This document shows positions 5,151 through 61,050 of a stretch of DNA of 64,000 bases, piece after piece (position 1 is the stretch's first letter; each line of letters starts with the position of its first letter). Source of the DNA: Isurus oxyrinchus (Eukaryota); NCBI GenBank assembly GCA_026770705.1, contig JANJGN010000039.1:10292001-10356000 (forward strand), in the 5' to 3' direction. A program made the translations under genes and the position numbers. The notes beneath the pieces were generated by a model, which did no database searches, was not told where the DNA came from, and worked only from the letters and a program-made list of their open reading frames with translations.

Positions 5151-5845
5151 GCTCTCTCCTCCTGCCCGACTCTGTCAACCCTTGGGCCCTGCTATTTATA
5201 CTCCAGGCCCTGCTCTCTCCCCCGTCGGCCCATCTCTCTAAACCCCTCTATCCCCTGACATCACTCTGCCCCCTTCTGCCACACGTGCCTGCGCTGTACC
5301 CCCTCCCCTGCTCCAGCCGCACCTCCCTCTCTTCTACTCCTAGTGCCGGACCATACCTTAAAATCTCATATTTCCTCTATTTATCCCTCGTCTAATGAAA
5401 GACTTGTTTCACCATGCATTTGCTTCTGATATTCTCACTGCTGAACAAATGCATGGAAGAGCCAGTCTATGAATCGATGAGCAGCTCCACCGCATTGATT
5501 AAATCTGAGACATTTGAATCAATGATACCTTTCAGTGAATATTTGCAGCGTTTCTTTTCAGTTGAGTTGATGCTGAGGCTATTGTTACCTTCTGTCAACT
5601 GAGTATGAATGGGTAATCTAGAAGATGGAATACTGTCTGTGAGCAGTGAGTGAGATGGAGAGGTTGAGCTGGGAGACAGATGGAGACCTGGTTCAGAGAA
5701 GTAGGAATGATTCCAGGATGAATTTGCTAACTTTTCAAGCGGCGGAGAGTGAAAATGAAGTTATTGCTGCATTGCGTTTACAATTGATTCGCTGTATAAC
5801 TTCAACTATGTTTTATATTAACATGAATCATATTTTGTCTCACAG

Positions 5846-5990
5846 TCGCAGATTCAGCACTCATTGACCCCTGTGCAAATCACACCATCTTGGACCAGGC
5901 CTGGAGGAGCATCTATTGTAAATGGACTGAGTGCACTGGCCATTGGATGTGTGATAACAAACTTCAGGAAGGATGGTACCAATTTAAAAG
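5846..5990 (+). CDS. D8C-domain exon A (ADSALIDPCANHTILDQAWRSIYCKWTECTGHWMCDNKLQEGWYQFK)
   Basis: Acceptor tattttgtctcacag, donor AG|gtaatg. The DPC..HT.LD..WRS...CD..L..GWY.F motif matches the UMOD/GP2/OIT3 D8C N-terminus. Confidence 0.88.
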
Positions 5991-8900
5991 GTAATGTGCA
6001 GTGATGCATTCTGATAAACTGGGCAAAACTATGAAAGTGAGTGCAATAGCAGCAAATAGAGACAGGCACAGATCATCAGTAATGTTACTGGGAAAGAGTA
6101 AAAAGCAAATAAATTTGACTTTTGTAGATAGCGATTTGGTACACCTGAGCGGATTGCTCGGACATTTCCGACTCAAGAACATTGCTGTAGGTCTGGAGTC
6201 ACGTGTAGGCCAGTCCAGGTAAGCACGGCAGATTTCTTTCCCAAAGGTGAACCAGATGAATTGTTCCGGCAATGCTTGATGGCTTCACGGTCGCACAGTT
6301 ACTATGACTAACTTTATATTCCAGTTGGATTCTTTGCATTTAATTTGACAGCTGCCGTGGTTGGACTTGAGCATGTGTCCCGAGTACATGAGCATGCCTC
6401 AATGGCTCTTTCGTTTAGTGATAATATCACTGTGCCGCAACTACCCCATAAGTGGACAGTAGCATTCGCACCACACAAACGCCAGGCAATTACTATCATG
6501 AAAAAGACAGAATCTATACTTCTTCCCTTGTCACCCAAAGGCTTTACTATCGTTCAGTTGACCCACTATAAGCTAACTGATTAACTGCCCAGTAAGTATC
6601 CTCCATACTGCACAACCACGGCAGCTCAATGAAGTATAACAGAAGGAGACTTGGATTAATTGGACAGATCCTTCAAACAGCTTATTTGGGACATGATAGA
6701 ACTAGTGGCCTCATTCTGAGCTGTGCATTCCTTAAACCTATGATTCTCTAATTGATGTTTCAGTTCTGGTGGATTGAAGATTCCAGACACCCTCATCCCA
6801 TTCGGTTACTGTTCCACAAGTTCTTCAGGCTGGTTAAATGGTTTGTTCTGACTTTATAATATCAGATTTACATTCACTGTCCTACGCTGTTCACATTGGA
6901 TACATCCTTCAATATTTATAAACGTAATTTCAGGTTCACATCCCACCGTGGGAGAGGGGGAAGTAACCAGGACAGTTTGTTTTACCTCGGGTGAAAATGG
7001 CTGCCTCTGGACCCGAGAGATAAAGATTAAAAACTGCAGCAGTGACTTCGTTTATGAGCTGAAGCCGGTGCCAAGCTGTAATGCTGCTTATTGCACAGGT
7101 ACATTGCTGTTTATAAATGACCCAGGAGGGTGACTCTGGATGTGCGAGGTCACTCACATAAATAATAATGTTCCGCCTGCTCCTCATTGCTGCAAGTACC
7201 ACAAGGAATAATGACCTGAAAAATAAACTAAACTTTTCACCAAAACTATAGGGAACCGACTCAGACTCTATTGCCATTGCGGTCTACAAACAGCCCATCG
7301 TTTGATCACGTGATAGGTTTTCGAATGTGAGGGGGGTGTTATGGGGAAGGAGGGAAGAGGCAGATTGGTTTATAGAGGGAATAACAATGCTTAGATCCCA
7401 GGCAGCTGAACACACACTTGTCAGTGTTCTGGATCCGGAATTGGAAGAGCAGAGAGTAGTTTGATGGTTGTGGGCCTCGTACGAATATTATTGCGGCTGT
7501 GGTGGTGAACTGTGGACCAGGTTCTTGGAGGTACATGACCATCAAGAGTTTGCGCACCACATAAGAGCCTGAATTTTCTTGACTCAGAACCGTGTGACTT
7601 TGGTTGCAAATCGGGAAATGTGTGAGAGTCCTGTGGAATTTCCGAAGCACACACATGCACCGAATTTGCCCGTGAGGATTAATGTTATGATGGTCTTCTA
7701 CCCGTTGCTGGGAATCGAAGCAAATCTCTCTGATAAAATGCCCCAGAATATTCCATCACCGGCAGGCGGGCGGCCTCCCTCCCAGTAGATACCTCAGAAA
7801 GATTCACTGGGGAAGCCCTGGAAGTCAGCACGTGAAGGCTGCATGGAAATTGCACAGGAAGTTTGAAATTATGCTGGACAAATACGCAGCACCAGGAACT
7901 ATCCGATTATGCGATTTAAGTAGAGGAATTTCGATCGTTTTGACTCTCGTAGTTGAAAAATGAATAGGAAAGATGCTCAGTTCGCTTACCGCTAGGCTGA
8001 CCCTGGATGCGCTATGATAACCTACTGACCTCTGGATCACCTCCCCAATCCCCAACTGCTCTCTCCCGATCACCTTCCCAGGCTCTGACTACCCTCCAAG
8101 CCTGACCTCCAACAAAACCCTTGATTACGGTCCAAGCCCCCTGAAACTGATTACTCTCACACATACTCCAGTAATCCAGAGTTACCTTACCTCCGTGGCT
8201 ATATCATCTCACCGTGACCTCCCAACACGCATGGCTAACCTCCACATCTCTTGACTACAGTCCCCCAAGCCGCATGCCAATCACCCCGATCTTCAGAATA
8301 ACCCACGCTCCCACCCAAGAACTTGTCTTGAGAACAACTGACCACTGCGCCCCTCACAGGACACCGGTACTGCCCATCAAAGCCCCATTCCCATGCAAAC
8401 CTCCACATTGAGCTGAGACACCTGCAATCCCAACCCACCCTATTCAAACAACCCACCCCACATCACAACTTAATCAATAACCTTCACCCAGGCTCCATAA
8501 AGTGGATGGGGCTTAAAAACATGACTGCCTCACGGCAGCGAGTTCTGCAAAATTTGGCCCTCTGTTCACTAGCTCTAACATGCAGCCCTGCACTGCAGGT
8601 TCCCCAGGTGGTGCGGCCATGCACATTTTTCGTCGGGCTGAGGGGGATGTAGTGACTGAGGGAGGGTGAGATGTAGTGACTAATGAGAGTGGGATGTCGT
8701 TATTGAGGGGAGTAGGATGTCGTGATTGAAGGGATTGAGATGCAGTGCCTGAGCGGAGCAGGATGTAGTGACTGCGGGGAGAGGGATGCAATTACTCAGG
8801 GGAGTTGGCTGCATTCGCTGACGTAAGTGGGATGCATTGGCTGCAGGGACTGGGATGCATTGGCTGAGAGGAGTGGTAATTTGAGTATAGCCATGAGTGA

Positions 8901-11900
8901 CAGGGAATAAGTAATGAATAGAATCATGTTCTTAACATAATAAACAAGTACATGCTCTCTTGAGGTGTGCTGCAGTCTGCAATCTCCCATGTCTCCTTAC
9001 TTCATTTCAGATCCAGGTACAATACCAACTCTGAAACCTGAGGAACAGTCAACTCGTGAATACGATGTCACGGCATCATCGAGCCCAACAGAATCGGAAA
9101 TATCAGGTATTAGTCTGGCTGGAAAAGTCTACAGAAAATCCTCACATGTTTGATCTCTGAAACCTCACACTGAACGAACTGGAAGGTATTGACTGAGGGA
9201 TGCGGGATGCAGTGACTGAAGTGGGTCTGATGCAGTGACCATGGAGAGTGGGATGCAGTGAATAGGGGGCGTGGGATGCAGTGACTGGGGGGAGTTGGAT
9301 GTAGTGACTGAGGGGAGCGGGATGCCGTTAAGGAGAGGACCAGGACGCTGTGAATGAGGGGAGTGGGATGCAATGACTAATCGAGTGGGATGCCTTGAAT
9401 GAGGGGACGTGGATGCAGTGGCTGATTGAGCGGGATGGACTTGTTAAGGGGAGTGTGATGCAAGTAGTGAGAGGAGTGGTTGGCAATCAATGAGGGGACT
9501 TGGATTAATGGCTGATGGTGTGGGATGGATTTGTTTCCTTGAGTGTGATGCAGGGAGTAGGATGCAGTGACCGACGGGTTTGGAATGTATTTACTGACCT
9601 GAGTGGATTGCCGTGCTTAGGCTGTGGCCATTGTGTTGTATTTTCTGAGCGGAGTGGGATTATTGAACACAAGGGGTGGGATGTAGAGAGTTGTGTAATG
9701 GAATTCTGTGAATCTTGGTGGTCATGTTCATGAATGGATGCAGTGTGGTGCTGTCGCTGAGACGGCAGTTTCTTCCTTAGATTGGCATCGGTGTTTTACT
9801 GAACACTAACATGCACTCTTCAGGTTTACGGTCACTCATGTGCTCACTTCTGTTAATTATCTGAGGAGACTGGGATGCAGTGATTGAGGGGAGTGCGATG
9901 CAATGACTGAAGGGATTGTGATGAAGTGATGGAGCAGAGTGTGATGCAGTGATGGAGGAGAGTGGGATGCAGTGACGGAGGGGAGTGAGATGCAGTGACT
10001 GAGGGGAGGGTGATGCAGTAACTGAGGGGAGTGTGATGCATTGGCTGTAGTCAGAAGGAGGCAGTGACTGAGGGGAGATGGAAGCTGCTACTGAGGAGTG
10101 TAGGAGGCACTGACTGAGGGGAGTTTCATGAAGTTACTAAGGGGAGGGGGATGTATTGACTGAGGAGGGGGGAAGGAGGAAATGACTGAGGGGTGTGGGA
10201 TGCACTGACTGAGGGGAGGGAATGCAGCGACAGAGGGAGAGGAATGCACTGGTTGCGGAGAGTGGGATGTAGTGACTTAGGGGAGTGGGCTGCAATGACT
10301 GGGGGGTGTGGAATGCAGTGACTGAGTGGATTTGAAAGCTGGGACTGTGTGGAGTGGAATGCAGCGACTGAAGGAAGTAAGATGCAGGGACTGAGGGGTG
10401 TGGGTTGCAGTGACTGAGGAGAGTAAGATGCAGTGGCTGAGGGAAGCATGATGTGCTGACTGAGGGGAGTGGGTTGCAGTGACTTAGACGAGTTGGATGT
10501 AATGACTGAGGAAGTAAGATGCAAGGACTGAGGGTGCGGGATGCAGTGACTGATGGGAGTTGGATGCTATGACTGACTGGACTGGTATGTAGTGACTGAG
10601 GGAAGTAAGATGCAGGGACTGCGGAGTGCGGGATGCAATGATTGAGGGGCGGTGGGGCAGAATGCATTACTGTTGGGAGAGGGATGCAGCGACTGTGGGA
10701 AGTGGTATGCAGTGATGAGTGGATTGGCAGCTTTTTACTGAGAGGAATGAATATCAGTGGATTAGTTTATTGGGCTGCATTGATTGAGGCCAGTGTGCTG
10801 CATTGTCTGAGGGCAGTAGGATTATTGAAAGTGGGGAGAGATGTAGAGACTGACTTGCTGGAATTCTGGGACTGTTGGTATCTGTATCTATGAGTCAGGG
10901 CAGTGTGGCACTGTCGCCGAGCCGACTGGTTCACACTTAGATTGGCATCTGTGACTTATTGAACATTAGTATGAATTTTTAAAGTTTTCTGTCACTCAAG
11001 CGCTGACCTCTGTTTATATTGAAAGCAGTGGGATGCAGTGACATAGGGAAGAGTGACGCAGTGACGGTGGGGAGAGGGATGTATCGATGGAGGGGTGTGG
11101 TATGTAGTGACGGAGGGGGCTGGGATGCAGTGGCTGCGGGGAGCGGGGTGAACTGTCTGAGGAGAATGGTTTCAGTCACTGGGCGTCAGACTGACATTGG
11201 CGTGATTCAGACAGAGGAAAAAATAATGTGCATCACTTTCTTAACATTCCTACCAAGTAAAGCCTCTCTTGAGGTGATCTGCATTCTGCAGTCTCCCATG
11301 TCACCTTATCTCATTGCAGTCCAAGGGATAACACAAACTCTGAAATCTGAGGAACAGTCGACTCGTGAATACATTTTCACTGCAACATCCAGCCCAACAG
11401 CATCTGAACCAGCAGCTATCAGTGTGGAGGGTATATTCTACAGAAAATCTGCACATATTTGATCCCTGAAATCTCACAATGAAGTAACTGGAATGTAGGG
11501 CCTGAGAGCAGCGGGATGGAGTGTCTGAAGGCTGTCTGATGCATTGGCCGTTGGGAGTTGAATACCGTGACTGAGGGGACAGGGGTGCAGTGAGTAGATT
11601 ATGAGGGATGCAGTGACTGAGGGGAGAGTGATGCAGTGTCTGAGGGAATGGGGATGCAGTGAATGATGGGAGAATAATGTAATGACTGAGAATAATGGGA
11701 CATAGTGAATGAGAACAGTGGGATGTCATGCCTGAGGGGACTAGGATTTTGTGAATGAGGGGAGTGGTATGCCGTGAATAAGGGGAGTAGGATGTCGTGA
11801 CCGAGCGGAATGGAATGTCCTGACTGAGGGTAGGCAGACCTAGTGACTGATGGGAGTAGAATATAGCCGCTTAAGTGAATGGGATGTCGTCATTGAGGGG

Positions 11901-14814
11901 AGTGGGATGTCCTGATTGCAGGGAGTGGGAAGACGTGTTTGAGGGGAGAGTAATATGGTGATTGAGGGAAGTAGAATATCGTGACTGAGGTGAGTGGGAT
12001 CTCCTGATCGAGGGACGTGGAATGTCATGACTGAGGGGAGTGGGATGTTGTGACGGAGGTGCATGGGAGGTAGTGACTGAAGGGGCTGGGATGCAGTGAC
12101 TGAGCAGAGTGACTTAGTGACTTATGGGAGTAAGATTAGTGATGGAGTGGTGTGGGATGTAGGGACTGAGGGGAGTGGGATGCATTGACTGAGCGATGTG
12201 GGATGCAGTAACTGACGGGCATGGGAGGTAGTGAGTGAGGGGAGTTTGGATGCAGCTACTGATATGATTGGGATGTAGTGACTGAGGGCAGTGGGATGTA
12301 GTGACTGAGGGCAGTGGGATGTGGTGACTGAGGGGAGTGTGATGTCATGATTGAGGGGATTGAGATGCAATGCCTGAGGGGAGCAGGAAGCAGTGACTGC
12401 GAGGAGTGGGATGCAGTGACTGTTGAGAGTGGTTTTTAGTAATCGGGGTATAGCCTGGAGTGACAGAGTAGAATTAATGAAATGAATCATGTTCCAAACA
12501 TTATTAACAAGTAAATGCTCTCTTGAAGTGATGTGCACTTTGCAATCTCCCGTGTCTCCTTACTTCATTGCAGTTCCAGGGACAACAGCAAATCTGAGGA
12601 ATTTTCGATTAGAGAATCCACTGTCCCTGCATCATCTAGCCCAACAGGAACTGAAATAACAGGTGTCAGTCTGGAGTGGATATGCTCCAGAATATCTTCG
12701 CACATATACTTTCCGAAATCTTCTTATATAGGGAGGTGGGTTGGAATGTTTGAGGGGAGTGGGAAGTTGTGACTGTGGAAATTGGGAGATTTCTATTGAA
12801 TGAAGTGAGCTACAGTGGATGACGGGAAGGGGTGCATTGACTGAGGCCAGATTGTTGTTTTGTCTGAGGGGAGTGGTATTATTGAGCATGGGAAATGGTA
12901 TGTAGAGACTGATGGGCTGGAATTATTTGACTCTGGGTGGACATATTTATGACTCGGGGCAGTTAGGTGCTATCACTCAGCCGAATGTTTCAGACTTAGA
13001 TTGGCAGCTGCGTTTTACTGGACAGTAAAATGTACTGTTCAGGTTCTCTATCACTCCTGCACTGACGTCTGTTTATATTCATTTACTACATATCCAGATT
13101 CTTCCACAATTCAGAAACCTGAAGATCCAACAACTGGAAAATCCACTGGTAAACCACCTTCTAAATGTACCGCGCTTTTGACCTCGGGTATCTGTCTTGA
13201 GGGATTAAATCAATAATATTCTTTACCCAAAAAATCCTCCTGAAATTTTCACTCCCCGAGAGGCATGCATTCGCAATAATGCAAGCATTCTCTGACGAAA
13301 AATTGTCATTCCCCATCTCCAGTCTTCCTCTGAATTATCCCTTCAGGAGAGGGAGGACCGTCAGGTCTTATGATCGATTTGTAAGTATCTGTGGAAGTTA
13401 TACGTGCACTCCATGTGTTCCCCACTAACGATTGGCACAGGGTCAGCACATTATAACAGGAGAGTTGGATACTGACACTGTGCTGGAACTGAGGGAGTAC
13501 GATTTACACCACAGGAACAGGCCACTCTGACCAATTGGTCCACTCTGGGGGTCATTCTGCACACGACCATTCTGCATCCTCCAAATACCAGCCCTATTCA
13601 TCTGTTTCATTATCACTCATGTGTGTATATACCTCTTCTTGAAATGTCACTGACGTCAACCAATCTGGGAGCAAGTTCTAAGTTATCACCAGATTTCAGA
13701 TCCACAGTAAAGACATTTTTAAAAAAATATACTTATTGTAATTGACTATTTTAGATTTTATTTTCATCTGAAGTGCTCTTTCTCTCTCTTTGACTATCCA
13801 GTGCTTTAATCTCTGACTTTGTCTCTCTCTGCATCTATCAATCTCTCGTTTTCTCTATGTCGTTCCTTTCTACACTTCTCTGCGTCTCTCTCCCATTATC
13901 GCCAACTCTACTGGTCAATCTGAAAATGTCCCATTTCCTTGGCAACTAGGATTAATGAGTTGTAGTGGCTGATGGAAGCTCCATTCATGGCCCAAATGTA
14001 TTCTGATGTAGTTACTGAGGTAACATGAATGCAGTAACTGAGGGGATTGGGATGTAGTGATTGAGGATAGTGGGATGTCGGGACTGAGGATAGCGGGATG
14101 AAGTGACTGAGGCGAGTGAGATGCTTTGACTGAAGAGAGTGAGATGTAGTAACTGAATGGAGTGGAATGCAGTGACTGAGGACAGTGGGATGTATTGACT
14201 GAGGGGTGTGGGACGTAGTGACTGAAGGTAGGAGGATGCTGAGTCTGTGAAGATTCGCAATGAGTCAGTTTGGGACGTCGAATGTATTTGACTTTGTAGC
14301 CTCTACTTAGTTCACACTCTGTCTTGACACACGGAAGATTCGACAGATTGACACATGTGTTATAAAAACAGCTGCGTGACGTTCTCTGGACAGTTCTGCC
14401 GAATAAGGTTGAGCTGTTTAAGGGGATCCCCAAGTTCTCCCTTTTCTATCACCGTTTATTCCATATCGAGGGACATTGTTTCTCAGGTTCCTTAGTTGTG
14501 AATGTACCAGAGAATCCATTGAGAGACTATCCTCTATCTCAGCCTTGTCTCCAGCATCAGGTATCTGCTCTGTGGCGTTCTATCTAAGCTGATCCTTCAT
14601 TCATTTGGAGTCAACAATGACTCAGACCAAGAGATTTACCCTATATCTTGCTGAAGGTGTGGGATGCACTAACTGAAGTCTGGGTGATTTTGAGCAGAGT
14701 CACACGGGTGAACTGATCAACTTTTAGCGCAATAATAACATGTTTATTTATATTTATATATTTTATATATATATATATATATACAATATAAATATACACA
14801 CAAACACCAATATA

Positions 14815-14857
<43 letters not shown>

Positions 14858-17800
14858 CATATTATGATTTGTAAGGATACCACAAGGTACAAAGCTATCC
14901 CAAGCTCTTATTTTCACCGTATGTTCACAGTCCATGTAAAATTATGACACCCTGTGATCATTTTAACTACATCCTGGCATCCAGTGACAGATGCCACCTC
15001 AACTAAATGCTATGGATCTCTCATCAACTCCTCCCAGACACCTTTCACACCACACTTCCACATCAAACCACACTCTGTCTTTCATATGAAGAATTCCATT
15101 CTCCACTATCCAAGAGCTCACCTTGGAATCTTCTCACAAACTGACACTTTCTCTCAGTCGCCTTCCACAATGTTTCACCTGCGGATTCCAAGCTATCTTT
15201 CTGATGCTATTCTCCCCTGAGCCGCCACATGCATCCAAGCTGTCTTCCATGTGCTCTCTCTCTCATCGAATCAGCTATAACTGCAGTAACTTCACATGTC
15301 CTAGCAAAGAGTTAGACATTGAGACACCTTTTCAGTCATTCTTGCCTCATGCCAGCTCTTCTGGCTTTAAAACTGATTTCTGCTGCTTTTGTTTCTTTAA
15401 TTCTGAATTTGGAGACTTTCGCTCTGCCCCTCACCCTTCACTTCATTAATAGGACCCATTTTCGGTTTGTGCCCTTCCTTCACCCAGAAGTTCTGCTTGA
15501 CAATTCCTTTGGTTCCACTGCCCTGGATGTTGGGGTCTTCATATTAGCCTTGGATTGTTTACCTGTTCCCTTTGCACCAGTTTCTCTGGCAGCTACTTTC
15601 ATCCAATTTTAGCTTGGGACTAACTATCTTCCCCATTTATGTGACTTCAGCTTGGCAAATGGCTCCCAAAGAATCTAATGCAGTTTTGCTTCTGTTTTTG
15701 CCTGCGGGAGTGACCTTCGTCTATGGGCGACTGTTGCGAGACAATAGCACTGTTTTTGCCTGCTCTTGTGCTTGCTTAGCTTCGTAAGTCATAAGCCTTC
15801 ACTAGGAATGCGAGCGCCATTTTAAAGTAAAACTAAAACTCAACTTGAGCTTTCCTGATACTCAAATACAGAAAAACAAATGAAACTTAAACTTTAAAAC
15901 TGATATCAACTCCTAACACATAGAAATACCACTATAATCTACCTAAACTATCTCTATTTGCTAAAATGGGTGACGGTCACTGAAGCTTCATGTTAAATGG
16001 TTAAAATTTCCTGGTCTCCACACTCCTCCTTCTCTCATTGCCCTCCTCCTTTATTTCAGATCCTGGGACTTCCCCAACTCAGCAACCCGAGGAAGAATCG
16101 ACAAGTGAATTAGTTCGTATTTCAGCCTCTATTTCAGCGAAGACTTCAAGCACAGGTATCTGCATGGGTGGGGTTGATTCTAAACTGATCCTTCACTTTT
16201 TTGACTCGAGGAGGATGCAATCGAGGAGTATATTCTATATCTAACAGAAGGAATATGATGTTCTCTGAGTGGGATATGGTTTTCAATTTTTCATTAAAGT
16301 AGGATATGGTGACTGTGGGAGTTGGTTGTATCCTCTGAGCAGAGTGGGGTGTGGTGACAGAGGGGATGGGGATTTTGTGACTGAGCGGAGGGAGATGTAG
16401 TGACTGATCGCAGGTCGATCCAGTGACTGAGAGGATTGGTATGTAGTGACTGATTCGAATGGGACATAATGACTGAGGGGATTGGGACACAATGACTGAG
16501 TGGAGTGGGATCAAATTACTGAGGCAGCTGGGATGCAGTAACTGAGGGGAGTGGGATCAGCTGATTGAGTGGAATGGGAACGAGTGACTTGGGATATAGT
16601 GACTAATCGGATTGGGATGGAGTCACTGAGGGGAATGGGATTTAGTGACTGAGGGGTGAAGGATATAGTGTGTGAGGGGAGTGGGATGTTATAACTGAGA
16701 GGAGTGGGATGTTGTAACTGAGGGGTGTGGGATGTTTTAACTGAGGGGAGTGGGATGTTGTGACTGAGGCGAGTGGGATGTTGTGACTGAGCAGGGTGGG
16801 ATGTTTTCACTGAGATGAGTGGGATGTAATGAATGAGGTGAGTGGGTTGTACTGCCTGAGGAAAGTTTGATGTAATGAATGAGGTAGTGACTGAGGCGAG
16901 TGGGGTTTTGTGACTGAGTGGATTGGGTTGTTGTCACTGAACAGTGTGGGATGTAGTGAGTTAGAGGACTGGGATGTATTGTGTGAAGGGAGTGGATGTA
17001 GTGAGTAATGGGAGTGGGATGCAATGACTGAGGGGTATGGGATGTAGCGGCTGAGTCAGTGGGATGTAGTGATTGAGCGGTGGAATCCTAATTTGGAATT
17101 TTCCCATCTTTATATCATCGCCGCTTGCAATCGGCTCTCTCTTTAAACGTGCTTTATGCAGCTTTTGACTCTTTAAATCTGAGGCATGTTGCATGTCTCT
17201 CTTCCTCTCACTCTTACCTTCGTTAAGATGACCAGCTTGAGACTTTCTCCTGCTCCAAACCCGTATATTTTGTGCTATTTTCTTCAGTTTGGGGCTGGTT
17301 ATCTGATGCCTTTGGTCCAATCTCTCTGGTAGATACCTTCAACCAATTTTAGCTTGGGACTAGCTATCTGTCCCTATTCATTTCGCAACATTCTTGAAAG
17401 CCAGCAGAGCTCCAACAGCTTCCCACACAAGCTGCTGTCTTTATTCCTTCGTGTGTGCCTGTGAGAGATAGGTGCCTGCCTGGAACTCTGTTGCAGGGCA
17501 ATAGCACTATGTTATACTAATCTTGTGTTTGCTTAATTAATAATTTGTAAACGGTCATTAGAAATGCCAGTATCGTTTTAAACTGAAACCAAAATTCATG
17601 TTGAACTCTCTTATCACAAAAGTACAGAAATGCTAAGCAAGCCTAAACCTCAATATATTTGCTGTGTGACATTTACTGAAGCTTCATGTCAAAGAGTTGA
17701 AATCTTCCTTTTTCCCCCTCTCACTCCTCCTTCCCTCCTCTCCCTCCTCCTTTATAGCAGATCCAGGGACCTTCCTAACTCCAGAACCAAGGGAACAATC

Positions 17801-17959
17801 GACGACAGAATCCATTAATATTTCTCCCTCTATATCATCAAAGTCTTCAAACTCAGGTATCTGCACAGTGGTGTTGTTTCACTTAATTTGTTTATCATAT
17901 CACGCTTCTTCCTAAGTGGATTATTTGTTCCCAGAATGAGCTCACTCACAGGGCTCCAT

Positions 17960-18011
<52 letters not shown>

Positions 18012-20749
18012 GCAATTAATGGGCCAGATCATGTAAATGTGAAGGCAGGAATCATTCTCAATCGAATACATTATTCAATCTCTTACAAACTGGACTGAAA
18101 GATTGCCAGAGAAAAAATATATGTAATATTCCATTAAACTAGACTGCATTGACTGAGGGAGTGATGTTTAATATCTTAGCAGATTGGAGTGTGGTGACTG
18201 AGGGGAGTAGTATTTAGTGTTTAAAGGGAGTGAGCTGTAGTGACTGAGGGCAGTGTGATTTCTTGACTTAGCGGAGTGAGATGTATTGAATTAGTGGAGT
18301 GAGATGTAGTGAGTTAGAGGAGTGGCATGCAATGACAGACAGGATTAGTTATGTAGTGAAGGAGAGGAGTGGGATGCAGTGACTGAGGGGAGCGTGATGC
18401 AATGCTTCCGGGGGTGGGATGCACTCAGTGGAGGCTGTGGGTTGGAATTACTGGTAGGCGGGATGCAATGACTGAGGGGAGTGAGATGGAATGAGTGAGG
18501 AGAGAGGAAAACAATCCGTGAGGCGAGTGGGAATTAGTCAGTGAGTGGATTAAGATTTAGTGACTGAAGGGAGAGGGTTGTCATGACTGAGTTGAGTTGG
18601 TTAGAGCAAATGAGGAGAGAAGGCTGTAATGAGTGGAGGGAGAGGGATATAGTTGAGTAGGTTCAGTGGGGCGCAGTGACTGAGGGGTCTGGAAGTTTTT
18701 GACTGCGGTACAATCAGGAGTGACAGAGCAAACTAACATTTGTGTGTTCCAAATTATATAATTATGAATTGAAACGTTTTCTAAACTTTGCTACCAGTTG
18801 CATGATCTCTTGAGCTGATACGCACCCTCCATCTCTCTTGTCTCTTTTCCTCATTTCAGATCCAGGGAAAACACCAACTCCAGAATCTGAGGTACAGTCG
18901 ACTCGAAAATCCTCTCTCTCTGAATCATCCAGCCCAAAAGGATGTGAAATATCAGGTATCAGTCTGGATAGGAGATTCTACTTAAAATCTTCACACAATG
19001 TGATCGCTGCAAACTGATACTGAAGAGTCTGGGGTCTGCTAACTGAGGGGAGTAGGATGCTGTGACAAAGTGAAACGGCATGTAATCAGCGGGGGCAGTG
19101 GGATTTATTGACTGAGGGAAGTGGGATGTAGTCAATTTGAGTAATTGGATGCGTTGACTGAGGGTGAAGTACATAGTGGCTGATGTGTTTGGGACATGGG
19201 CTGAGCGGCGTTGGATGCAGTGACTTTAGGGAACTGGATGCAGTGACTGAGAGGAGTGGGGCGCAACGAGTGAGGTGAGTGGAACATAGTGACTGAGGGG
19301 TGTTGGATGTAGTCAGGGGGTGGAGTGGGATGCAGTAAATAAGGGAGTTGGACGCAGTGAGTGAACACATTGGGATTTAGTGATTGAGGGTATTTTGTAT
19401 AATTAGCCTAATCAAGCCCCTTTTCTCTCTTCCTCCATTTTCCAGTCACTTCTCTTCACTCTCACACTTGTTTCAGTTTCTCATCGCTCACTTCAGTTGT
19501 CTGTCGCTTGTTCTCTCACTCCTGTTGGGTGCTCCATGCTGAAGGTTTTGTTTTGCTGGTTTCTCTCAGAATTTGGAGAGTTTGGGCCCGGCAAATTTCT
19601 TTCTCTGTTGAAATGTAGATGATTCTGCAGCTGAGGATTTCTGAGAATCCTTTGGTGAGTAATGGTCCTGAATTATTCGCTGTGGTGAAGCAGTGGTATC
19701 AGGTTAAATAGGAAGTGAGGATGTCCAGAATAAAAGATCAGAAGTAATATGAGCAGAACTAAACTATTCGACCTGTGGAGCCTGTTCCACCATTCAATAC
19801 GATCATGGCTTATCTTGGGATTTACCTGAACTTTCCTGCCCGCTCCCCATATCCATTGATTTCTTGAGACACCAAAACATTGTCAATGTCAGGATTATAA
19901 ATATTTTTAGAAAGCTATTCCTTCCATCGATTAATGATTTTGAATCGCTGTCAAACCCCTGTCTTTCCGGAATATCCCTTTAGGGAAGGAAATCTGCCGT
20001 CATTCCCAGCTCTGAATGCTATGTGACTCCAGTTCCTGAGCAATGTGCCGGACTCCTAACTGTCCTCTGAAATGGCCCAGGTAGCCATTCAGTTGTAATA
20101 GGCCGCTACAGAGAAGAGACAGCACAGGAACTGTGGCAGTTCAAGAAGGCGCCTGCCCAACACCTTCTCAAGGCTTGTTATGGGTGGATAGTAAATGCGG
20201 GTCTTGCCTGCGATGCAGACACATAACAAATTAAAACAAAACAAAATAGTGTATTCGCTTTGTGTGAAATCACTCGAGACACGGTCTGCAGCTTTGTAAA
20301 CATTTCCTGAGCTTCTATCTCAGTCTCTGTATCACTTGTGTCTTCATCTCTCTGCCTCTCCCTCTCTGTCCCTTTCTTATTCTCACTGACAAGACGTAAA
20401 CATGGGATGAAAATGATATAAGAAGAGATAACAAGGGGCTGACATTGAAGAGTAAGTATACCAAATGATAATACGGAAAGCAGAGAGTTGAGATAAGATG
20501 GAGTGAGATGAAGAGATATATGGGGAGGGAAAACGGAGAGGGGATGATAAGGTGGATTAGAGGAAGCTGATCTTAAACGGAAGGGATTTTTCTAAACACA
20601 CAATCTGTCCTTTGTGAAATTCAGGGTAAGTCTAACCTGCTGATGTTGTGACTATTCTGTTAGATCCTGATTTCAAGATGCTTCGCGTGAAGGTCACCTC
20701 AGTACGAGGGCTCAATGAAGAGAGAGCGAGGGACATCATTATGGATCGG
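5846..20749 (+). CDS. Multi-exon uromodulin/GP2-like D8C-domain protein with repeated mucin-like stalk exons (first exon and 3' end unresolved; functional status uncertain)
   Basis: Exons 5846-5990, 6764-6840 and 6934-7098 have AG/GT sites and compatible phases and join into a D8C domain. They are followed by paralogous 96-bp phase-1/1 exons and a candidate exon at 20664-20749. Confidence 0.75.
6150..6440 (-). mobile_element. Elasmobranch SINE (SacSINE1-like) in intron
   Basis: Reverse complement matches the SINE core seen at 19960-20230, 43510-43750 and 60645-61002 (..ggaaatctgcc..ttacctgg..ggcctaca.gtgactccagacc.acagcaatgt..). The family name is from recall. Confidence 0.65.
6764..6840 (+). 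CDS. D8C-domain exon B (SSGGLKIPDTLIPFGYCSTSSSGWLNG)
   Basis: Acceptor atgtttcag, donor G|gtttgt. Phase 2 to 1, continuous with exons A and C. GG.KIP....C......WLNG motif. Confidence 0.85.
6934..7098 (+). CDS. D8C-domain exon C (SHPTVGEGEVTRTVCFTSGENGCLWTREIKIKNCSSDFVYELKPVPSCNAAYCT)
   Basis: Acceptor aatttcag, donor AG|gtacat. The HP...EG.V.R.VC......CLW...I.IKNC..FVY.L.P...C..AYCT motif is diagnostic of D8C. Confidence 0.92.
9011..9106 (+). CDS. Stalk repeat exon 1, 96 bp, intact (DPGTIPTLKPEEQSTREYDVTASSSPTESEIS)
   Basis: ttcatttcag acceptor, CAG|gtatta donor, phase 1/1, open frame. Confidence 0.78.
11320..11415 (+). pseudogene. Stalk repeat exon 2, 96 bp, donor mutated GT>CT (VQGITQTLKSEEQSTREYIFTATSSPTASEPA)
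   Basis: Clear paralog of 9011-9106 including flanking intron. Acceptor tcattgcag is intact, but the exon ends CAG|ctatca. Confidence 0.7.
12574..12662 (+). pseudogene. Stalk repeat exon 3, 89 bp (net 7-bp deletion, frameshifting)
   Basis: Paralog with AG/GT sites, but length 89 is not a multiple of 3. The 3' part reads SEEFSIRESTVPASSSPTGTEIT in a shifted frame. Confidence 0.68.
13092..13187 (+). CDS. Stalk repeat exon 4. Ancestral acceptor is CAT; an in-frame alternative acceptor at 13097/13098 gives 90 bp (DSSTIQKPEDPTTGKSTGKPPSKCTALLTS)
   Basis: 96-bp spacing to donor GG|gtatct. A downstream CAG 6 nt into the exon keeps the frame. Confidence 0.55.
14465..14560 (+). pseudogene. Stalk repeat exon 5, divergent, acceptor CAT (DRGTLFLRFLSCECTRESIERLSSISALSPAS)
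   Basis: 96-bp open frame ending CAG|gtatctgc like its paralogs. The acceptor position reads CAT. Confidence 0.5.
14748..14865. repeat. (TA)n-rich microsatellite
   Basis: Runs of tatatata seen directly. Confidence 0.9.
16060..16155 (+). CDS. Stalk repeat exon 6, 96 bp, intact (DPGTSPTQQPEEESTSELVRISASISAKTSST)
   Basis: Polypyrimidine tract plus ttatttcag, donor CAG|gtatct, phase 1/1. Confidence 0.78.
17761..17856 (+). CDS. Stalk repeat exon 7, 96 bp, intact (DPGTFLTPEPREQSTTESINISPSISSKSSNS)
   Basis: Long polypyrimidine tract plus tagcag, donor CAG|gtatct, phase 1/1. Confidence 0.78.
17962..18008. repeat. (TA)n microsatellite
   Basis: Perfect AT dinucleotide run. Confidence 0.95.
18860..18955 (+). 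CDS. Stalk repeat exon 8, 96 bp, intact (DPGKTPTPESEVQSTRKSSLSESSSPKGCEIS)
   Basis: tcatttcag acceptor, CAG|gtatca donor, phase 1/1. Confidence 0.78.
19619..19654 (+). other. Candidate 36-bp phase-1/1 micro-exon with in-frame TGA (DDSAAEDF*ESF)
   Basis: ttctctgttgaaatgtag acceptor and strong G|gtgagt donor. TGA at 19642-19644. Confidence 0.4.
19735..19900 (-). mobile_element. CR1 LINE 3'-end fragment
   Basis: gagcaga...attcg.cc..t.gagcctg.tcc.ccattcaata.gatcatggct.atc, similar to the CR1 3' end at 47805-48370. Confidence 0.6.
19960..20230 (+). mobile_element. Elasmobranch SINE (SacSINE1-like)
   Basis: cctttagggaaggaaatctgccgtc...gtgactccag...caatgtg...ctctgaaatggcc..., shared with the other copies in the window. 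Confidence 0.65.
20664..20749 (+). CDS. Candidate C-terminal exon of the D8C gene (DPDFKMLRVKVTSVRGLNEERARDIIMDR)
   Basis: tattctgttag acceptor, CGG|gtgaga donor. Starts in phase 1 with DP like the stalk exons, and the frame is open. Confidence 0.5.
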
Positions 20750-21330: not shown

Positions 21331-24008
21331 TTAAAAATGAGCTATTTTTCATGATCAATCCACTTCTCTCAGATTCAGTCATCTTGCCCAATCCCTCCCT
21401 TGATTGCGTCACTCACCCATCATTTCTTCTGTTTGCGGCAGCTCCAGAAGGATCAATGTCTAATTGGGTTGAAGCGTGAGGACATTCAGTGCTCAGGTGT
21501 GGACCATCCAGAACCGTGAAAGAGATGGAGAGTGTCACCGAGCCGCCGTGATCCCAGCTCCTTGTGCATTTCAAACTCGCTCGATGACTACTCTGCTTTA
21601 CCTTCAGCGTCTTTAATGCAATGAATCTGTCAGCAAAGTGATCATCCATAACTAGGTATGTGTGATTCTGATGCGGCTATTGCTTCAGCTCCACACTGCA
21701 AGAGTGGGGGAGTTCTTCAAGCCTAGTTAAATATAGAATGCGGCCCCTCTTTTAGATCAGTGACCTCTGGCCAGCCTGAAGCCAGATTGGCCCACCAGTT
21801 CCGGCCCGTTTCAGGATGGAAGTGATCTCCTGTTTAATGAAGGTTTTCGATTAAAGATCTCCAAAGGTGTAAAAGCCCTAAAGTTTCATGGAACTGTCAA
21901 CACTGAGAATGGGCGCATGAACCACAGGTAGATGCTTGTTACAGGACAGCCACTGGGAAGATATGCTCTATTTAATCAATGTTTCTGTAGAATGGGGGAA
22001 TAATTTGGTGCTGGGCTTTGCAGAACCAAAAATAGGCTCACAAGTCAAGATTATATTGAATGTAAGGATAATTTCGTTTGGCAATAGCTGGGTTAGTTCT
22101 GCTGTATAAATTTGTGATGATGTTGGTGTGACAGAAAGAAAATGTTAGGGTATCAGCTGAATTAAGAAAAGTGACTGATAAGAGGTGGATTCTTTACACG
22201 GAATTATATTCTTGAGGAAGTGAAAAGTAAGAATTATTTTTTTTTACATTTTTCACTGACGACCATCAATAGAAATGCTGTGAAATGACTCATTGACCCT
22301 ACAGGGTAATCCAAACAAACTGCACAGGTCAGCAAAGTGGGCTTCAATTGATGGGTAATCAGACAAGGAGATATCTCAGCTCGAAAGGCATCAATAAAGT
22401 GGCAGATTGCAAACAGTGTTCCAATTACAAGGGTTTGAATGGCTGAACACTGAGTTTACAACTAGAACATGCTTACATCACTGATAACACCACTCTGATG
22501 TGAAATCTGTTTGATTTTAAACTTTGTGTGTAATTGCTGTTGCTTGAGTTGTGTGCACAATAAATTTCTGAACGCTTAACCTGAACCTTTTAGGAAGCTC
22601 TTTCATCTTTTACTGGAATGGTTGGATCACCTGACACCTTTCTTCTCTCCCTTTCTATTTGAGGGCTGCTCACTGAGTGGAGAGCGTCAGTGTCAGGAAG
22701 GCATGGGAGTGTGAGGGATGATTTGTTTCCACATTCCCAGCTCCCAGAGTCAAAGCCTCTTCTAAAATCCTTTCACTGTCTTGTGATTAAAGTGTTACAA
22801 CCCAACCTCTGCTGGACGCCCCCCTGCCTCTACAGGCCCTGCTCTTAGCCGGTCCTAGAGAAGTTCAGTTGCTGCATGGCTGCCTCTGGAAACATATCAA
22901 TGAAGTGTGAATATTGAACAATGTTGAAAGGCATTGAAGTTTGCAGAGGGATGGAAAGTTCACTCGGGTGGTGCATTTGTTAGTTGACCACCTGACCCTT
23001 TGCACGAACTTTCTCCTCATTCTCCATTGGAGATATTGGCTGGAGATGGTAGCTGGGTATTATTTCAGACAGCAAGGTGCACATTTGTTTCAGTTATCAG
23101 GCTCTAATCCAGTACAGAATGGAATTAGATAAACGTTGCTGTACTCTGTAATTCCTGTGCAACACATTGGCAATGTTTGAACCGACACATTGGATCTTGT
23201 TAAACGTTTTCATTAAATATGTCTTCAAGATAATTTTCTCATTTTCTCTCAGAGTATTCGTCAATAGAAAATATATTGAAAACACAAACAGACAATGGGA
23301 CAAACATTATTGTTAACTTTACTTTTATAAGAACACTCCAGTGTTGAACATGGTATCACATCCCATCCCACAATATCCCTGGTTTACTCAATCTTCCCCA
23401 TGGAACCTGCAGTAGAATCAGCCTCACCCAATCTACCTGGCATGGCTTTCCCTATTACTGTTCCTAATTTGCCTCCAGGCTGACAGTGGCATTTTACCAA
23501 CTTCTCCGCATCTAGGCCCCAATATAAGGGCTATAGAGTGAGACAGCTGACTCTAGGATTGAGATTCGGCCGTGGCCCCTCCAGTGGCCATGGAAACAGA
23601 TATGAGCTTGACACTTTCCCCAGCGAGAGAGCGTCCTCCCCACTTTTTTTTAACAGAGTCATAGAATCCGCTCGCCCCTCTGCCAACGAAGCCAGAGGGA
23701 ATGTCCCCCTCTACCTCCACAGTGACAGGCCCTACCACTACTGACACTAGAGTGACAGGCTCCATTCCTCCTCTTTTACCATAGCAAAAGCACCAGCCTC
23801 ACATTCCCCGTGATAGCAGCAGCACCCCCCCCCCTCTCTAACCATAGTCAAAGGCTCCAGCACCCGCTTTGTGACCAGTGCATTAGGCAACAGCCTGGGA
23901 ACCGGACCAATCCCCATTCTCTAACAACAGAGGCAGCTCACATCCCTGCTGGAGGAAAGAAATCAAATGGTAAAGTAATGGAAACTCTCAGTGATTTATT
24001 TCTTCAAA

Positions 24009-46595: not shown

Positions 46596-47804
46596 GCACT
46601 TGTTATGTGTAACACTTCCTTGTATTATCACAGACCCAGACACGTAACAGAACGAGGGATCTGAGGCACAATATAGTTGAGACTCCCGTCGGAGTTCATG
46701 CTTTGTCATAGTCGGATCATCAGACTCAGGTACCTGAATTGTCAACTCAAATTGAGGATAAACTTCCCCCAACACAACTCAATCACGGAGAATCGTTCAG
46801 TCTGTCATCAATGGGGAATATACAGAGTGTTGAGTCTTGCCCCTTTCCTAGCCCCCACCCCCAAGTAACCACTCCCCTCCAATCTACCTCCGTACCCAGT
46901 TCCCACTCTCACCTCTAACCCTGCCAAGGGGCTTTGAGTGGGTGTATCTGAAACCTTGTCCTCTCAGTGTTACAGCGGTCCTGGACCTCAGCAACCTGGA
47001 ATGTGACCAGATCAATACCGAAGTCCAAGACATTTACATCTCCAGGAACAAACTGGACACTCGCGAGGAAAAGAAAGCCTATTTTCAGCAGGTGACGGGA
47101 TTCATCCTGCAGGCATTGTCGGGCTGTGGGCAGCAGCCAATCAACAAGATGAGTCGGCATTATTTAACCATTTCATTGATTGATAATCTCCAGTTCGCAT
47201 TGAGTCAAGGGCAGGGATTCGATTTCCCTTCCTCACTCTCTGGGAGGGGTTTAATTGAAACGATTGGGGGGAGGGGAGTCAGTTTCCCAAATGCTGTATG
47301 GGCAGACTGTGAGCTGGTGTGGAGTGGACAGGGAGTGTTCGGGTGTTGGAGGGGTGGGACATGTTCCCCCCTCTTGTTCAGGGATGGAAGTTCGCTCGTA
47401 CTAAATGGCCATCGATGTCTCATGAGTTTCCCTTGTTAGTTGCTCAGTAACTACGATCCCAGTCAATCCGACCTCACTCCTTACCTATCCATTCCGAGGT
47501 ACATGAAATGCTGAAAAATATTCTTACCTGTAAGAAGCTGGTGCCAAAATTACAAGAGAATCCCGGCGAGGAAAGGAATAAATGACCCAGAAGATCCAGG
47601 TTGGTTGGCGAGTGGGTTGGAACCTGATTTCTGGAATGAGGGACAGGCTCCGGGAGCATGAGGGTGTGGTCTCATTGGTGGTGGAGCATGGGGTTGGGTG
47701 TTGTCTTTCGGGGTTATTATTTGATTTTGGGTTTGGGGTGTGCTTGAGCCTGAATCATCATCTGTGATAGCTTTTGGTATAACTCAAGAATTCTTATTTT
47801 GTGA

Positions 47805-58204: not shown

Positions 58205-58509
58205 CTGTGAGCAAGGGAAATAAACAGGACAAGAATATACTAGGTTAGCAGAAAAGTTTATTTGATAACTTACTGTCATTTTCGATTGTGCCACTGTAAC
58301 AATTAATAAATTTAATTGATTTTACCTGTAATAACAAATGGTGGAGTTTTAAATTGTTGTATGTCTGGAGAGATTAAATGTTCAAGTATAATACTGATAT
58401 TGTAGAACTCAATTTTATTGGAGGTGCAGGAGCACCATTACTTTGGGTGCCTGTTTCCAATATTTGAACGTGTCAGTCGAGATTAACAAAAGCAGTTACT
58501 AGAACAGCT

Positions 58510-61040: not shown

Positions 61041-61050
61041 AGATGATTTT

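What the first reader, a model, noticed from the sequence alone, without database searches (positions are those of the whole stretch)
5846..20749. Hidden gene: uromodulin/GP2-type D8C 'decoy' head on a modular mucin-like stalk, with no ZP domain
Seen: three canonical AG/GT exons (5846-5990, 6764-6840, 6934-7098) splice in frame into a complete D8C/D10C domain, which the ORF track mostly misses. They are followed by S/T/P/E-rich exons, not by EGF/ZP exons, and no ZP-like sequence is visible before the GPCR cluster. Established: in mammals this module occurs in UMOD, GP2 and OIT3 together with ZP domains and acts as a glycan decoy for the bacterial adhesin FimH. Inference: this may be a lineage-specific secreted or surface protein that presents a decoy domain on an O-glycosylated stalk instead of a ZP filament, for example in skin, gill or gut mucus.
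Basis: partly seen in the sequence, partly recalled or inferred. Interest (0 to 1): 0.82.

Follow-up and report, generated by a model that had tools for sequence, protein, structure and literature searches.

The report
ZP-less uromodulin-like shark secreted gene
This is a real, spliced shark gene for a secreted protein that joins the bacterial-decoy head of uromodulin/GP2 to a sugar-rich linker and a small unknown tail instead of the filament-forming part; similar genes are already predicted in many sharks and rays, but no study of them turned up.

Summary
Exons 5846-5990, 6764-6840 and 6934-7098 (+) encode a GP2/UMOD-type D8C/D10C domain. Spliced contigs of coded run X1, from a relative about 3% diverged, join exon 2 to exon 3 and exon 3 to a 96-nt S/T/P/E-rich exon (9011-9106) at the predicted GT..AG sites.

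Stalk exons lie at 16060, 17761 and 18860, followed by two tail exons (20664-20749, and 21442-21519 with the stop). There is no EGF, ZP, membrane anchor or beta-hairpin. The signal-peptide exon lies upstream of the window.

It is not a new architecture. It is 283/301 residues identical, exon by exon, to white-shark LOC121274779. RefSeq predicts that gene under several names: 'uromodulin-like', 'mucin-5AC-like' and 'uncharacterized'. The same head-linker-tail family is predicted in 17 elasmobranch genera. I found no paper on it.

The decoy function is inference. The GP2 N65-type sequon is present here, but only in 24 of 103 aligned family heads.

The scan also noted a similar gene 46.9 kb upstream in this genome (s1-897998, unchecked). 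Interest is moderate.

The parts
5846..5990 (+). D10C exon a. It starts in phase 1 and encodes ADSALIDPCANHT...GWYQFK, including an NHT sequon aligned with GP2 N65. It is the first exon of the gene inside the window.
   Evidence: An X1 contig covers exactly 5846-5990. Its loose ends match exon 2 on one side and a signal-peptide-like upstream exon on the other.
6764..6840 (+). D10C exon b (SGGLKIPDTLIPFGYCSTSSSGWLN).
   Evidence: Joint 6840|6934 in the X1 contig. 25/25 identical to P0182. Family profile positions 45-71.
6934..7098 (+). D10C exon c. It ends in phase 1 at ...AAYCT.
   Evidence: Pfam PF23283, E 7e-7. GP2/UMOD, E about 3e-7. Joint 7098|9011.
9011..9106 (+). Stalk exon 1: 96 nt, phase 1 to 1, 11 S+T and 4 P in 31 residues.
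   Evidence: Spliced to exon c in X1. 31/31 identical to P0182. Both differences seen in organism A are synonymous.
11320..11421 (+). Stalk-exon copy with the original donor GT changed to CT. It is usable only through a weaker donor 6 nt further on. Its use is unproven.
   Evidence: Not present in the white-shark isoforms read. X1 depth is 0 in bin 11241-11440, which is weak evidence.
12574..12662 (+). Stalk-exon copy with a 7-nt deletion that shifts the frame. Probably a dead pseudo-exon (ends approximate).
   Evidence: Alignment A1. The two halves lie in different open frames.
13098..13187 (+). Diverged stalk-exon copy. The ancestral acceptor is lost and a 90-nt version is open. Its use is unproven.
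   Evidence: At most 9/21 identical to any orthologue stalk.
14455..14572 (+). Degenerate stalk-exon copy with no acceptor and no open frame.
   Evidence: nhmmer E 6e-18 in round 3. Alignment A1.
16060..16155 (+). Stalk exon 2: 96 nt, intact sites.
   Evidence: 28/31 identical to P0182. The last 9 loose letters behind 9106 in X1 fit it in register, which is weak evidence.
17761..17856 (+). Stalk exon 3: 96 nt, with an alternative acceptor at 17758 that gives 99 nt.
   Evidence: White-shark isoforms show both forms, 'ADPGK..' and 'DPGK..'. 26/31 identical to P0182.
18860..18955 (+). Stalk exon 4: 96 nt.
   Evidence: 29/31 identical to P0182.
20664..20749 (+). Tail exon 1 of the type A C-terminal module (DPDFKMLRVKVTSVRGLNEERARDIIMDR), phase 1 to 0.
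   Evidence: 25/27 identical to P0182. Type A profile E 1.2e-12.
21442..21519 (+). Last coding exon (LQKDQCLIGLKREDIQCSGVDHPEP), with stop TGA at 21517-21519.
   Evidence: 25/25 identical to P0182. Type A profile E 4.2e-13.
8640..18532 (.). Introns filled with arrays of a 23-bp minisatellite (GGGAGTGGGATGCAGTGACTGAG). Minus-strand ORFs through these arrays are artefacts.
   Evidence: arrays at 8640, 9190, 9861, 11027, 11553, 14029, 16417-17077 and 18190-18532..
46634..47585 (+). A second, type B tail. It consists of a 96-nt stalk-like pseudo-exon (46634-46729, with in-frame stops) and two open exons (46976-47091, and 47499-47585 with a stop and AATAAA). No D10C head lies between 21.5 and 46.6 kb.
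   Evidence: type B profile E 1.8e-13 and 1.7e-7.

Best explanation
The stretch holds most of a real protein-coding gene on the + strand. It is the orthologue of white-shark LOC121274779.

The product, in order:
- a signal peptide, whose exon lies upstream of the window;
- directly after it, one GP2/UMOD-type D10C domain (three exons);
- a linker built from 96-nt phase-1 cassette exons, 35-42% Ser+Thr and acidic. The orthologue's isoforms include or skip these exons;
- a conserved tail of about 55 residues, predicted as strand-helix-strand with two cysteines;
- a stop.

There is no beta-hairpin, EGF, ZP module, transmembrane segment or GPI-type tail. The product is therefore a soluble secreted glycoprotein.

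Shown: the exons, the splicing in a close relative, the D10C fold, the absence of ZP, and the spread of the family.

Inferred (about 0.3): it acts in secretions as a soluble, non-polymerising relative of the GP2/UMOD anti-adhesion decoys. The D10C head would offer an N-glycan (the NHT sequon at the GP2 N65 position) or a binding face to microbes. The O-glycosylated linker would set reach and solubility. The Cys-bearing tail would provide pairing, or attachment to another secreted component, in place of ZP polymerisation.
For: - Exons, sites and frames.
- D10C identity: Pfam, PDB sequence matches, family profile.
- D10C fold: the AF2 model of orthologue P0180 has block means of 85-98 pLDDT over residues 61-190. 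It matches the GP2 decoy-module crystal structure 7p6r at E 2.8e-15, TM 0.86 on the target, rmsd 1.4 A, 126 columns, 39% identity.
- Splicing: X1 contigs join 6840|6934 and 7098|9011. Exon a carries loose ends that match exon b on one side and an upstream ..TLLLIPGFL exon on the other.
- Orthology: 283/301 residues identical to P0182, summed exon by exon.
- Isoforms that differ in stalk exons.
- Pfam finds only D8C in 10 of 10 family proteins.
- Hydropathy: only the N-terminal peak, and a hydrophilic C-terminus.
- Purifying selection on stalk exon 1: 0 non-synonymous and 2 synonymous differences.
- The sequon aligns with GP2 N65. N65 carries oligomannose-5 and N65A abolishes FimH-lectin binding (PMC8930769, passages).
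- Zebrafish omc5, a D10C+ZP protein, protects against bacteria (PMC11415648, abstract and three sections).
Against: - There is no RNA from the window's own species. X1's kind is a guess by the tool ('RNA?'). It comes from an organism 1-5% different, and its residues equal those of the RefSeq models, so the two lines of evidence may not be independent.
- The signal-peptide exon is not in the window, so I cannot show that the gene is intact at its 5' end.
- The tissue is unknown.
- Against the decoy idea:
  - The beta-hairpin that forms the glycan groove in GP2/UMOD is missing.
  - The N65-type sequon is present in only 24 of 103 aligned heads, and the UMOD N275-type sequon in 2 of 114.
  - The canonical Cys set is altered.
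- The tail has no Pfam hit. It has no structural match above noise: best Z 4.5, SEA at Z 3.2.
- The head differs from organism A at 7 non-synonymous against 3 synonymous positions. That fits either fast adaptive change or relaxed constraint.
Confidence: 0.75

Rival explanations
1. The head is not a glycan decoy. The D10C domain itself binds a host or microbial ligand, or the protein is a structural component of a secreted matrix such as mucus, egg envelope or gland secretion. On this view the resemblance to GP2/UMOD is only a shared fold.
For: - There is no beta-hairpin, and the decoy sequons are poorly conserved: 24 of 103 and 2 of 114.
- D10C occurs in many other settings: with CUB, Ig, WSC or ZP-N in the long proteins, and in an 'astacin-like' named coral protein.
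- The most conserved sequon is KNC[ST], in 57 of 115 heads. That is not the FimH site.
Against: - The lamniform orthologues all keep DPCANHT.
- The two D10C families with tested functions are both antibacterial.
Confidence: 0.3
2. In this species the gene is a decaying or silent copy. The exons look intact only because the duplication or divergence is recent.
For: - Four of eight stalk copies are damaged.
- The signal exon was not seen.
- There is no RNA from this species.
- The head has 7 non-synonymous against 3 synonymous differences.
Against: - All nine exons used by the orthologue are open and have canonical sites, and 283/301 residues are identical.
- The damaged copies are exactly the ones absent from the orthologue's isoforms that I read.
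- Both differences in stalk exon 1 are synonymous.
Confidence: 0.07
3. The D8C exons belong to a larger UMOD/GP2-like gene whose EGF and ZP exons lie further downstream or outside the window.
For: None was found. Only the general rule that D8C usually sits with ZP in mammals favours it.
Against: - The stop at 21517-21519 is shared with the orthologues' C-terminus.
- tblastn of 205 proteins found nothing but the head, stalk and tails. Of the 10 long proteins among them that I scanned with Pfam, 2 carry ZP-N.
- The profile search of 3,242 six-frame pieces found only these parts as well.
Confidence: 0.02
4. One head, two tails: the type B tail exons at 46976-47585 are alternative 3' exons of the same gene. 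On this view the minus-strand GPCR gene at 24-25 kb lies inside an intron.
For: - There is only one D10C in the 64 kb.
- The type B exons are open, with pyrimidine tracts, AG/GT sites, a stop and AATAAA.
- On a tree of 30 heads, the tail type changes at least 6 times, and starred branches force at least 4. White-shark P0042 (type B) and P0044 (type A) are sisters at 100/100.
Against: - The stalk-like exon just upstream of the type B tail has in-frame stops.
- The type B exons are only 60-69% identical to the nearest protein, and they differ at conserved positions of the type B alignment.
- No protein among the 205 has both tails.
- P0042 and P0044 lie on different contigs.
- Gene conversion between tandem paralogues explains the tree equally well.
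Confidence: 0.15

Closest known systems
Carcharodon carcharias LOC121274779 (RefSeq predictions P0180 'uromodulin-like isoform X7', P0182 'uncharacterized isoform X2', P0195 'mucin-5AC-like isoform X6', and P0197/P0198) and Cetorhinus maximus LOC144672631 (P0185)
   Same: The signal peptide, D10C head, stalk exons and tail are the same. 283/301 residues are identical to P0182, summed exon by exon. The C-terminus ..SGVDHPEP is the same.
   Different: The species differs, at about 3% at the DNA level judging by organism A. These entries are automatic predictions with inconsistent names. None of the six identifiers I searched, which include both gene symbols, occurs in the paper library.
Human GP2 decoy module (PDB 7p6r/7p6s/7p6t) and UMOD branch (7pfp, 7q3n)
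   Same: The D10C fold matches: TM 0.86, rmsd 1.4 A, 39% identity for the orthologue model. An N-glycan sequon sits at the position of GP2 N65.
   Different: - There is no beta-hairpin, EGF IV, ZP module or anchor.
- Cys C6 is replaced by Gly, and exon b holds only one Cys where GP2 has C3 and C4 (this point is from recall).
- Two extra Cys lie in an insertion (CKWTEC).
- The UMOD N275 position is Glu.
Zebrafish omcins (omc5; PMC11415648)
   Same: They form a fish-lineage expansion of D10C genes in tandem clusters with variable copy number, and they have a tested antibacterial role.
   Different: Omcins keep EGF IV, a ZP module and a predicted GPI anchor, and they have up to five D10C domains. 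The paper calls the family teleost-specific.
OIT3/LZP and VWDE
   Same: Both contain D10C (legend in PMC8930769). From recall, VWDE shows that D10C can occur without a ZP module.
   Different: Their partner domains differ. Neither has a mucin-like cassette linker or this tail. The RefSeq names 'OIT3-like' and 'VWDE-like' given to family members rest on the head alone.
SEA-type or other small alpha/beta modules next to mucin domains
   Same: The position is the same, next to an O-glycosylated region, and the predicted order is strand-helix-strand.
   Different: There is no Pfam hit. SEA scores only Z 3.2 at rank 22, below the noise level stated by the tool. The tail is also about half the size of a SEA domain (size from recall).

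Membership tests
D8C/D10C domain (Pfam PF23283; GP2/UMOD/OIT3/VWDE) | Match to the family profile above the curated cut-off | tested here: met
   Exon c alone scores 29.8 bits against a cut-off of 27. Orthologues and paralogues score 36-87 bits.
D8C/D10C domain (Pfam PF23283; GP2/UMOD/OIT3/VWDE) | D10C fold as in the GP2 crystal structure | tested here: met
   The model of orthologue P0180 (not of the window's own protein) matches 7p6r at E 2.8e-15, TM 0.86, rmsd 1.4 A.
D8C/D10C domain (Pfam PF23283; GP2/UMOD/OIT3/VWDE) | The ten canonical cysteines forming disulfides C1-C8, C2-C9, C3-C6, C4-C10 and C5-C7 (PMC8930769) | tested here: not met
   - There are ten Cys in total, but not the same ten.
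- Gly aligns with C6 (C145).
- There is one Cys in exon b.
- Two extra Cys lie in an insertion of exon a.
- The loss of the C3-C6 pair is inferred. I did not read it from coordinates.
GP2/UMOD bipartite decoy module | A beta-hairpin preceding D10C that forms the glycan groove | tested here: not met
   The signal-like exon joins directly to exon a, six residues before DPC. P0176 starts MWTLLLIPGFLIADSALTDPC.
GP2/UMOD bipartite decoy module | N-glycosylation sequon at GP2 N65 or UMOD N275 | tested here: met
   NHT aligns with GP2 N65-Y-T. The N275 position is Glu. Across the family the counts are 24 of 103 and 2 of 114.
GP2/UMOD bipartite decoy module | A high-mannose glycan bound by FimH or other bacterial lectins | not testable with these tools
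   This needs glycoproteomics and binding assays.
ZP-module proteins (UMOD, GP2, OIT3, omcins) | ZP-N/ZP-C module, with EGF IV before it | tested here: not met
   - The stop lies at 21517-21519.
- Pfam finds only D8C in 10 of 10 relatives.
- No ZP hit came from tblastn of 205 proteins, which include two shown to carry ZP-N.
ZP-module proteins (UMOD, GP2, OIT3, omcins) | GPI anchor or transmembrane segment | tested here: not met
   The mean hydropathy of the last 15 residues of P0182 is -1.49, and the only hydrophobic peak is N-terminal. I could not run a dedicated predictor.
Mucin-like (PTS) regions | Ser/Thr/Pro-rich repeats carrying dense O-glycans | tested here: inconclusive
   The composition fits: 11-13 S+T and 3-4 P per 31 residues. 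O-glycosylation cannot be tested here. With only four to six units, this is a linker rather than a mucin.
SEA domain (for the tail) | Profile or fold match | tested here: not met
   There is no Pfam hit. VIA gives Z 3.2 at rank 22, and the best Z of any chain is 4.5.

The most novel reading that the evidence does not exclude
This gene is a member of an unstudied, elasmobranch-wide family of soluble D10C proteins in which ZP polymerisation has been replaced. The replacement is a splice-tunable O-glycosylated linker plus one of two ancient, interchangeable C-terminal modules, type A or type B. The two tails would decide how the decoy head is multimerised or docked in shark and ray secretions. 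In this locus both tails lie downstream of a single head and may be chosen by alternative 3' exon use.
Probability: 0.2. Interest if true: 0.6.

Novelty: new variant of a known kind. Interest (0 to 1): 0.4.

Why it matters
UMOD and GP2 are the model cases of 'decoy' defence. In them a D10C head displays a glycan on a ZP filament. A vertebrate lineage that keeps the head, drops the filament, the EGF domain, the hairpin and the anchor, and multiplies the gene would show what the D10C head can do on its own. It would also give the field a small, soluble, naturally ZP-free form to work with.

For genome annotation, this family is currently spread over at least seven different RefSeq names (uromodulin-like, GP2-like, OIT3-like, mucin-5AC-like, VWDE-like, F26C11.3-like and uncharacterized). 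Those names hide that it is one family with two tail types.

The cassette exons inside a minisatellite are also a clean example of exon birth and death.

Tried and rejected
- Minus-strand ORFs of 92-176 aa through 8513-19370. I rejected them as products of the 23-bp minisatellite.
- The signal-peptide exon. The 30-letter loose end before 5846 is not in the window at 3 mismatches or fewer. Relaxed tblastn with orthologue N-termini gave only chance hits, best E 0.022. I conclude that it lies upstream of the window.
- The continuation behind 9106. The loose-end consensus (agreement 0.58, two records) is not in the window. By blastn-short, only its last 9 letters fit stalk exon 16060 in register. 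This is unresolved; the consensus probably mixes two isoforms.
- The tail.
  - The Atlas feature search gave one hit at 0.78, below its own lead level.
  - The word-index search with residues 245-304 of P0180 found only 9 lamniform proteins.
  - hhalign of type A against type B gave probability 32%, so homology of the two tails is not shown.
  - The VIA wide search gave a best Z of 4.5.
- Papers.
  - 'D8C'+'shark': 14 papers, none relevant.
  - 'uromodulin'+'shark': 40 papers, 25 listed, none relevant by title or abstract start.
  - Six gene or protein identifiers: 0 papers.
  - 'D10C', 'zona pellucida', 'lacking' and 'cartilaginous fish': 23 papers, 12 listed, none on this family.
  - One search was badly framed (4,953 hits) and says nothing.
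  - Subscription journals and supplements were not covered. The supplements of PMC11415648 and PMC8930769 (alignments and gene lists) were not seen and might name shark homologues.
- The joined step. I made no spliced model of the window's exons for any search or fold. Whole-protein steps used stored public orthologues.

Full report
WHAT IS THERE. I searched them one at a time.
- Exon 6934-7098 matches Pfam D8C_UMOD above the curated cut-off (E 7e-7, profile positions 34-88 of 88). The other two exons hit no family at E<=10.
- Against solved structures, exon 6934-7098 matches human GP2 and UMOD at E 2.3e-7 to 5.1e-7.
- Exon 5846-5990 matches GP2 at E 6.7e-4, and UMOD only weakly at 0.11.
- A profile built from family members places the three exons on consecutive parts of one domain. 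It finds no second head among 3,242 six-frame pieces of the window.

SPLICING.
- The look-up of sequencing runs gave one run guessed to be RNA (X1) and six runs of unknown kind. All are from a coded organism A, and the six hold about a third of the sampled words.
- Laid on 5441-11440, X2-X4 cover introns and exons alike, at 95-99% likeness. They behave as DNA of a close relative.
- X1 has no depth in the intron bins, apart from a repeat at 6041-6240 that is deep in every run and one contig of depth 2.3.
- One 358-nt X1 contig lies on 6762-6839, 6933-7095 and 9008-9106, with GT..AG joints.
- One 204-nt X1 contig lies exactly on 5846-5990.
  - Its loose letters behind equal the start of exon 6764.
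  - Its 49 loose letters before end in codons for ..TLLLIPGFL.
- So the predicted junctions 5990|6764, 6840|6934 and 7098|9011 exist in spliced form in a relative.
- Caveats: these are contigs, not reads. The run's kind is a guess. The organism is not the window's.

THE STALK.
- An iterated nhmmer search found eight copies of the 96-nt exon and its flanks between 8985 and 18972, and a ninth at 46617-46741.
- In alignment A1, four copies (9011, 16060, 17761, 18860) keep AG, GT and an open phase-1 frame.
- The other four are damaged:
  - 11320 has lost its donor;
  - 13098 has lost its acceptor;
  - 12574 has a 7-nt deletion;
  - 14455-14572 is degenerate.
- A mechanical scan of all open phase-1/phase-1 AG..GT intervals downstream of 7098 was filtered for S/T/P/E content, a pyrimidine tract and donor +3. 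It returned only these places: 16 of 1,478 candidates.
- The introns are filled with a 23-bp minisatellite.

THE WHOLE GENE.
- Searching exon 6934-7098 against 1.84 billion representatives gave 1,026 hits at E<=0.001.
- The nearest short hits are shark and ray RefSeq predictions.
- A second search with one of them, P0044, listed 49 proteins.
  - 47 of them carry names of 17 elasmobranch genera.
  - No chimaera or bony fish appears, within the length and word limits of that tool.
- tblastn of all 205 stored proteins on the window, followed by reading the best ones, showed that white-shark LOC121274779 isoforms are built exactly from the window's exons. They have the head, stalk exons 9011, 16060, 17761 (as a 96- or 99-nt form) and 18860, and a tail.
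- The tail is found in the window at 20664-20749 and at 21442-21519, which includes the stop.
- Summed exon by exon, 283/301 residues are identical to P0182.
- The four damaged copies are absent from the five isoforms of that gene that I read.

WHAT KIND OF PROTEIN.
- Pfam sees only D8C in 10 of 10 family members.
- The orthologues' only hydrophobic stretch is MWTLLLIPGFLI at the start. The C-terminus is hydrophilic.
- The stalk exons are 35-42% Ser+Thr.
- AlphaFold2 on P0180 with 117 aligned relatives gives block means of 85-98 pLDDT over residues 61-190, a disordered linker, and a tail at 60-81.
- Foldseek puts the head on the GP2 decoy-module crystal structures (E 2.8e-15, TM 0.86, rmsd 1.4 A) and on UMOD.
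- A second model, P0203 with 24 relatives, gives the tail as strand-helix-strand at 71-87 pLDDT.
- The wide structural search finds nothing above noise for the tail (best Z 4.5).

COMPARISON WITH THE DECOY MODULE. The facts about GP2 and UMOD below come from passages of PMC8930769.
- N65A abolishes binding.
- D10C has five disulfides.

In the window's protein:
- the Asn of DPCANHT aligns with GP2 N65;
- the N275 position is Glu;
- there is no room for a hairpin between the signal exon and DPC;
- Gly replaces C6;
- two extra Cys sit in an insertion.

Across 117 aligned relatives, the N65-type sequon occurs in 24 of 103 heads and the N275-type in 2 of 114. A KNC[ST] sequon occurs in 57 of 115. 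The decoy reading is therefore possible for this orthologue group, but it is not a family rule.

Zebrafish omcins are D10C+EGF+ZP+GPI proteins, and omc5 protects against bacteria (PMC11415648). They are the closest studied fish parallel, and they keep the ZP module.

DIVERGENCE. The differences between the window and organism A in the head are 7 non-synonymous and 3 synonymous. Of the non-synonymous ones, 6 are listed and classified, and 1 is inferred. In stalk exon 9011 there are 0 non-synonymous and 2 synonymous differences. The numbers are small, but the head is changing fast.

TWO TAILS.
- Among the 205 proteins, 31 carry the tail seen here (type A), 18 carry a different one (type B), and none carries both. 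Each type occurs in both sharks and rays.
- The window also holds type B exons at 46976-47091 and 47499-47585. They are open, with good sites, a stop and AATAAA.
- They follow a stalk-like pseudo-exon with in-frame stops (46634-46729).
- No head lies between the two tails.
- On a tree of 30 heads (20 type A, 10 type B), the tail type needs 6 changes.
  - Seven proteins without a full head, and identical duplicates, were dropped before building it.
  - Starred branches force at least 4 changes.
  - The shuffled mean is 8.5.
  - 17-23 of 500 shuffles are as low.
- So heads group by lineage, not by tail. Either conversion between neighbouring genes or shared heads would explain this. I rate alternative 3' use at this locus at about 0.15.

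VERDICT.
- The architecture is already in public protein sets as unreviewed predictions under many names, so the 'hidden, new architecture' claim fails for relatives.
- My four useful searches found no paper that describes the family.
- The scan has also noted a similar gene 46.9 kb upstream in this genome (s1-897998). I did not check it.
- The function remains inference.

Noticed in passing
window 46634-47585 (+): A second, type B C-terminal module: two open exons with a stop and AATAAA, behind a stalk-like pseudo-exon with in-frame stops. It is 60-69% identical to white-shark P0042. No D10C head lies upstream of it within 25 kb.
   Followed up: partly
window 57291-58232 (-), 24009-25002 (-), 51426-51782 (-), 60284-60628 (-), 29111-29395 (+): A cluster of GPCR-like ORFs. 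One is intact (313 aa). The one at 24-25 kb is split over two overlapping frames, and the others are fragments. They match the GPCR-like part of stored protein P0036.
   Followed up: no
window 6041-6240: An element in the first intron that is hundreds to thousands deep in all four runs. It is an interspersed repeat, probably SINE-like.
   Followed up: no
window 4756-5148 (+) and 27505-28668 (+): Retroelement-like open frames. One is a reverse-transcriptase-like fragment just upstream of the first D10C exon. The other is a 387-aa ORF whose end looks like a nuclease (this reading is from recall).
   Followed up: no
window 122-3403, 32437-36046, 49142-50257, 61050-62187: Large tandem arrays:
- a C-rich 19-bp array, 174 copies;
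- a 37-bp satellite, 97.5 copies at 96% identity, with diverged relatives from 31.5 to 40.9 kb;
- a 69-bp array, 16 copies;
- a 41-bp array, 27.5 copies.
   Followed up: no
window 7074: The DNA runs X3 and X4 show A>G here (Ser to Gly), which is the residue of paralogue P0172. X1 and X2 do not show it. Some contigs laid here may therefore come from a paralogue.
   Followed up: partly
behind window 9106 (run X1): Two contigs continue for about 75 letters with a consensus that is not in the window (agreement 0.58). Only the last 9 letters fit exon 16060 in register.
   Followed up: partly
family level (proteins P0001-P0209): The tail's two cysteines are kept in sharks, but they are replaced in most ray sequences (DPDPQIEL.. 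forms). D10C also occurs many times per protein in corals and sea anemones.
   Followed up: no
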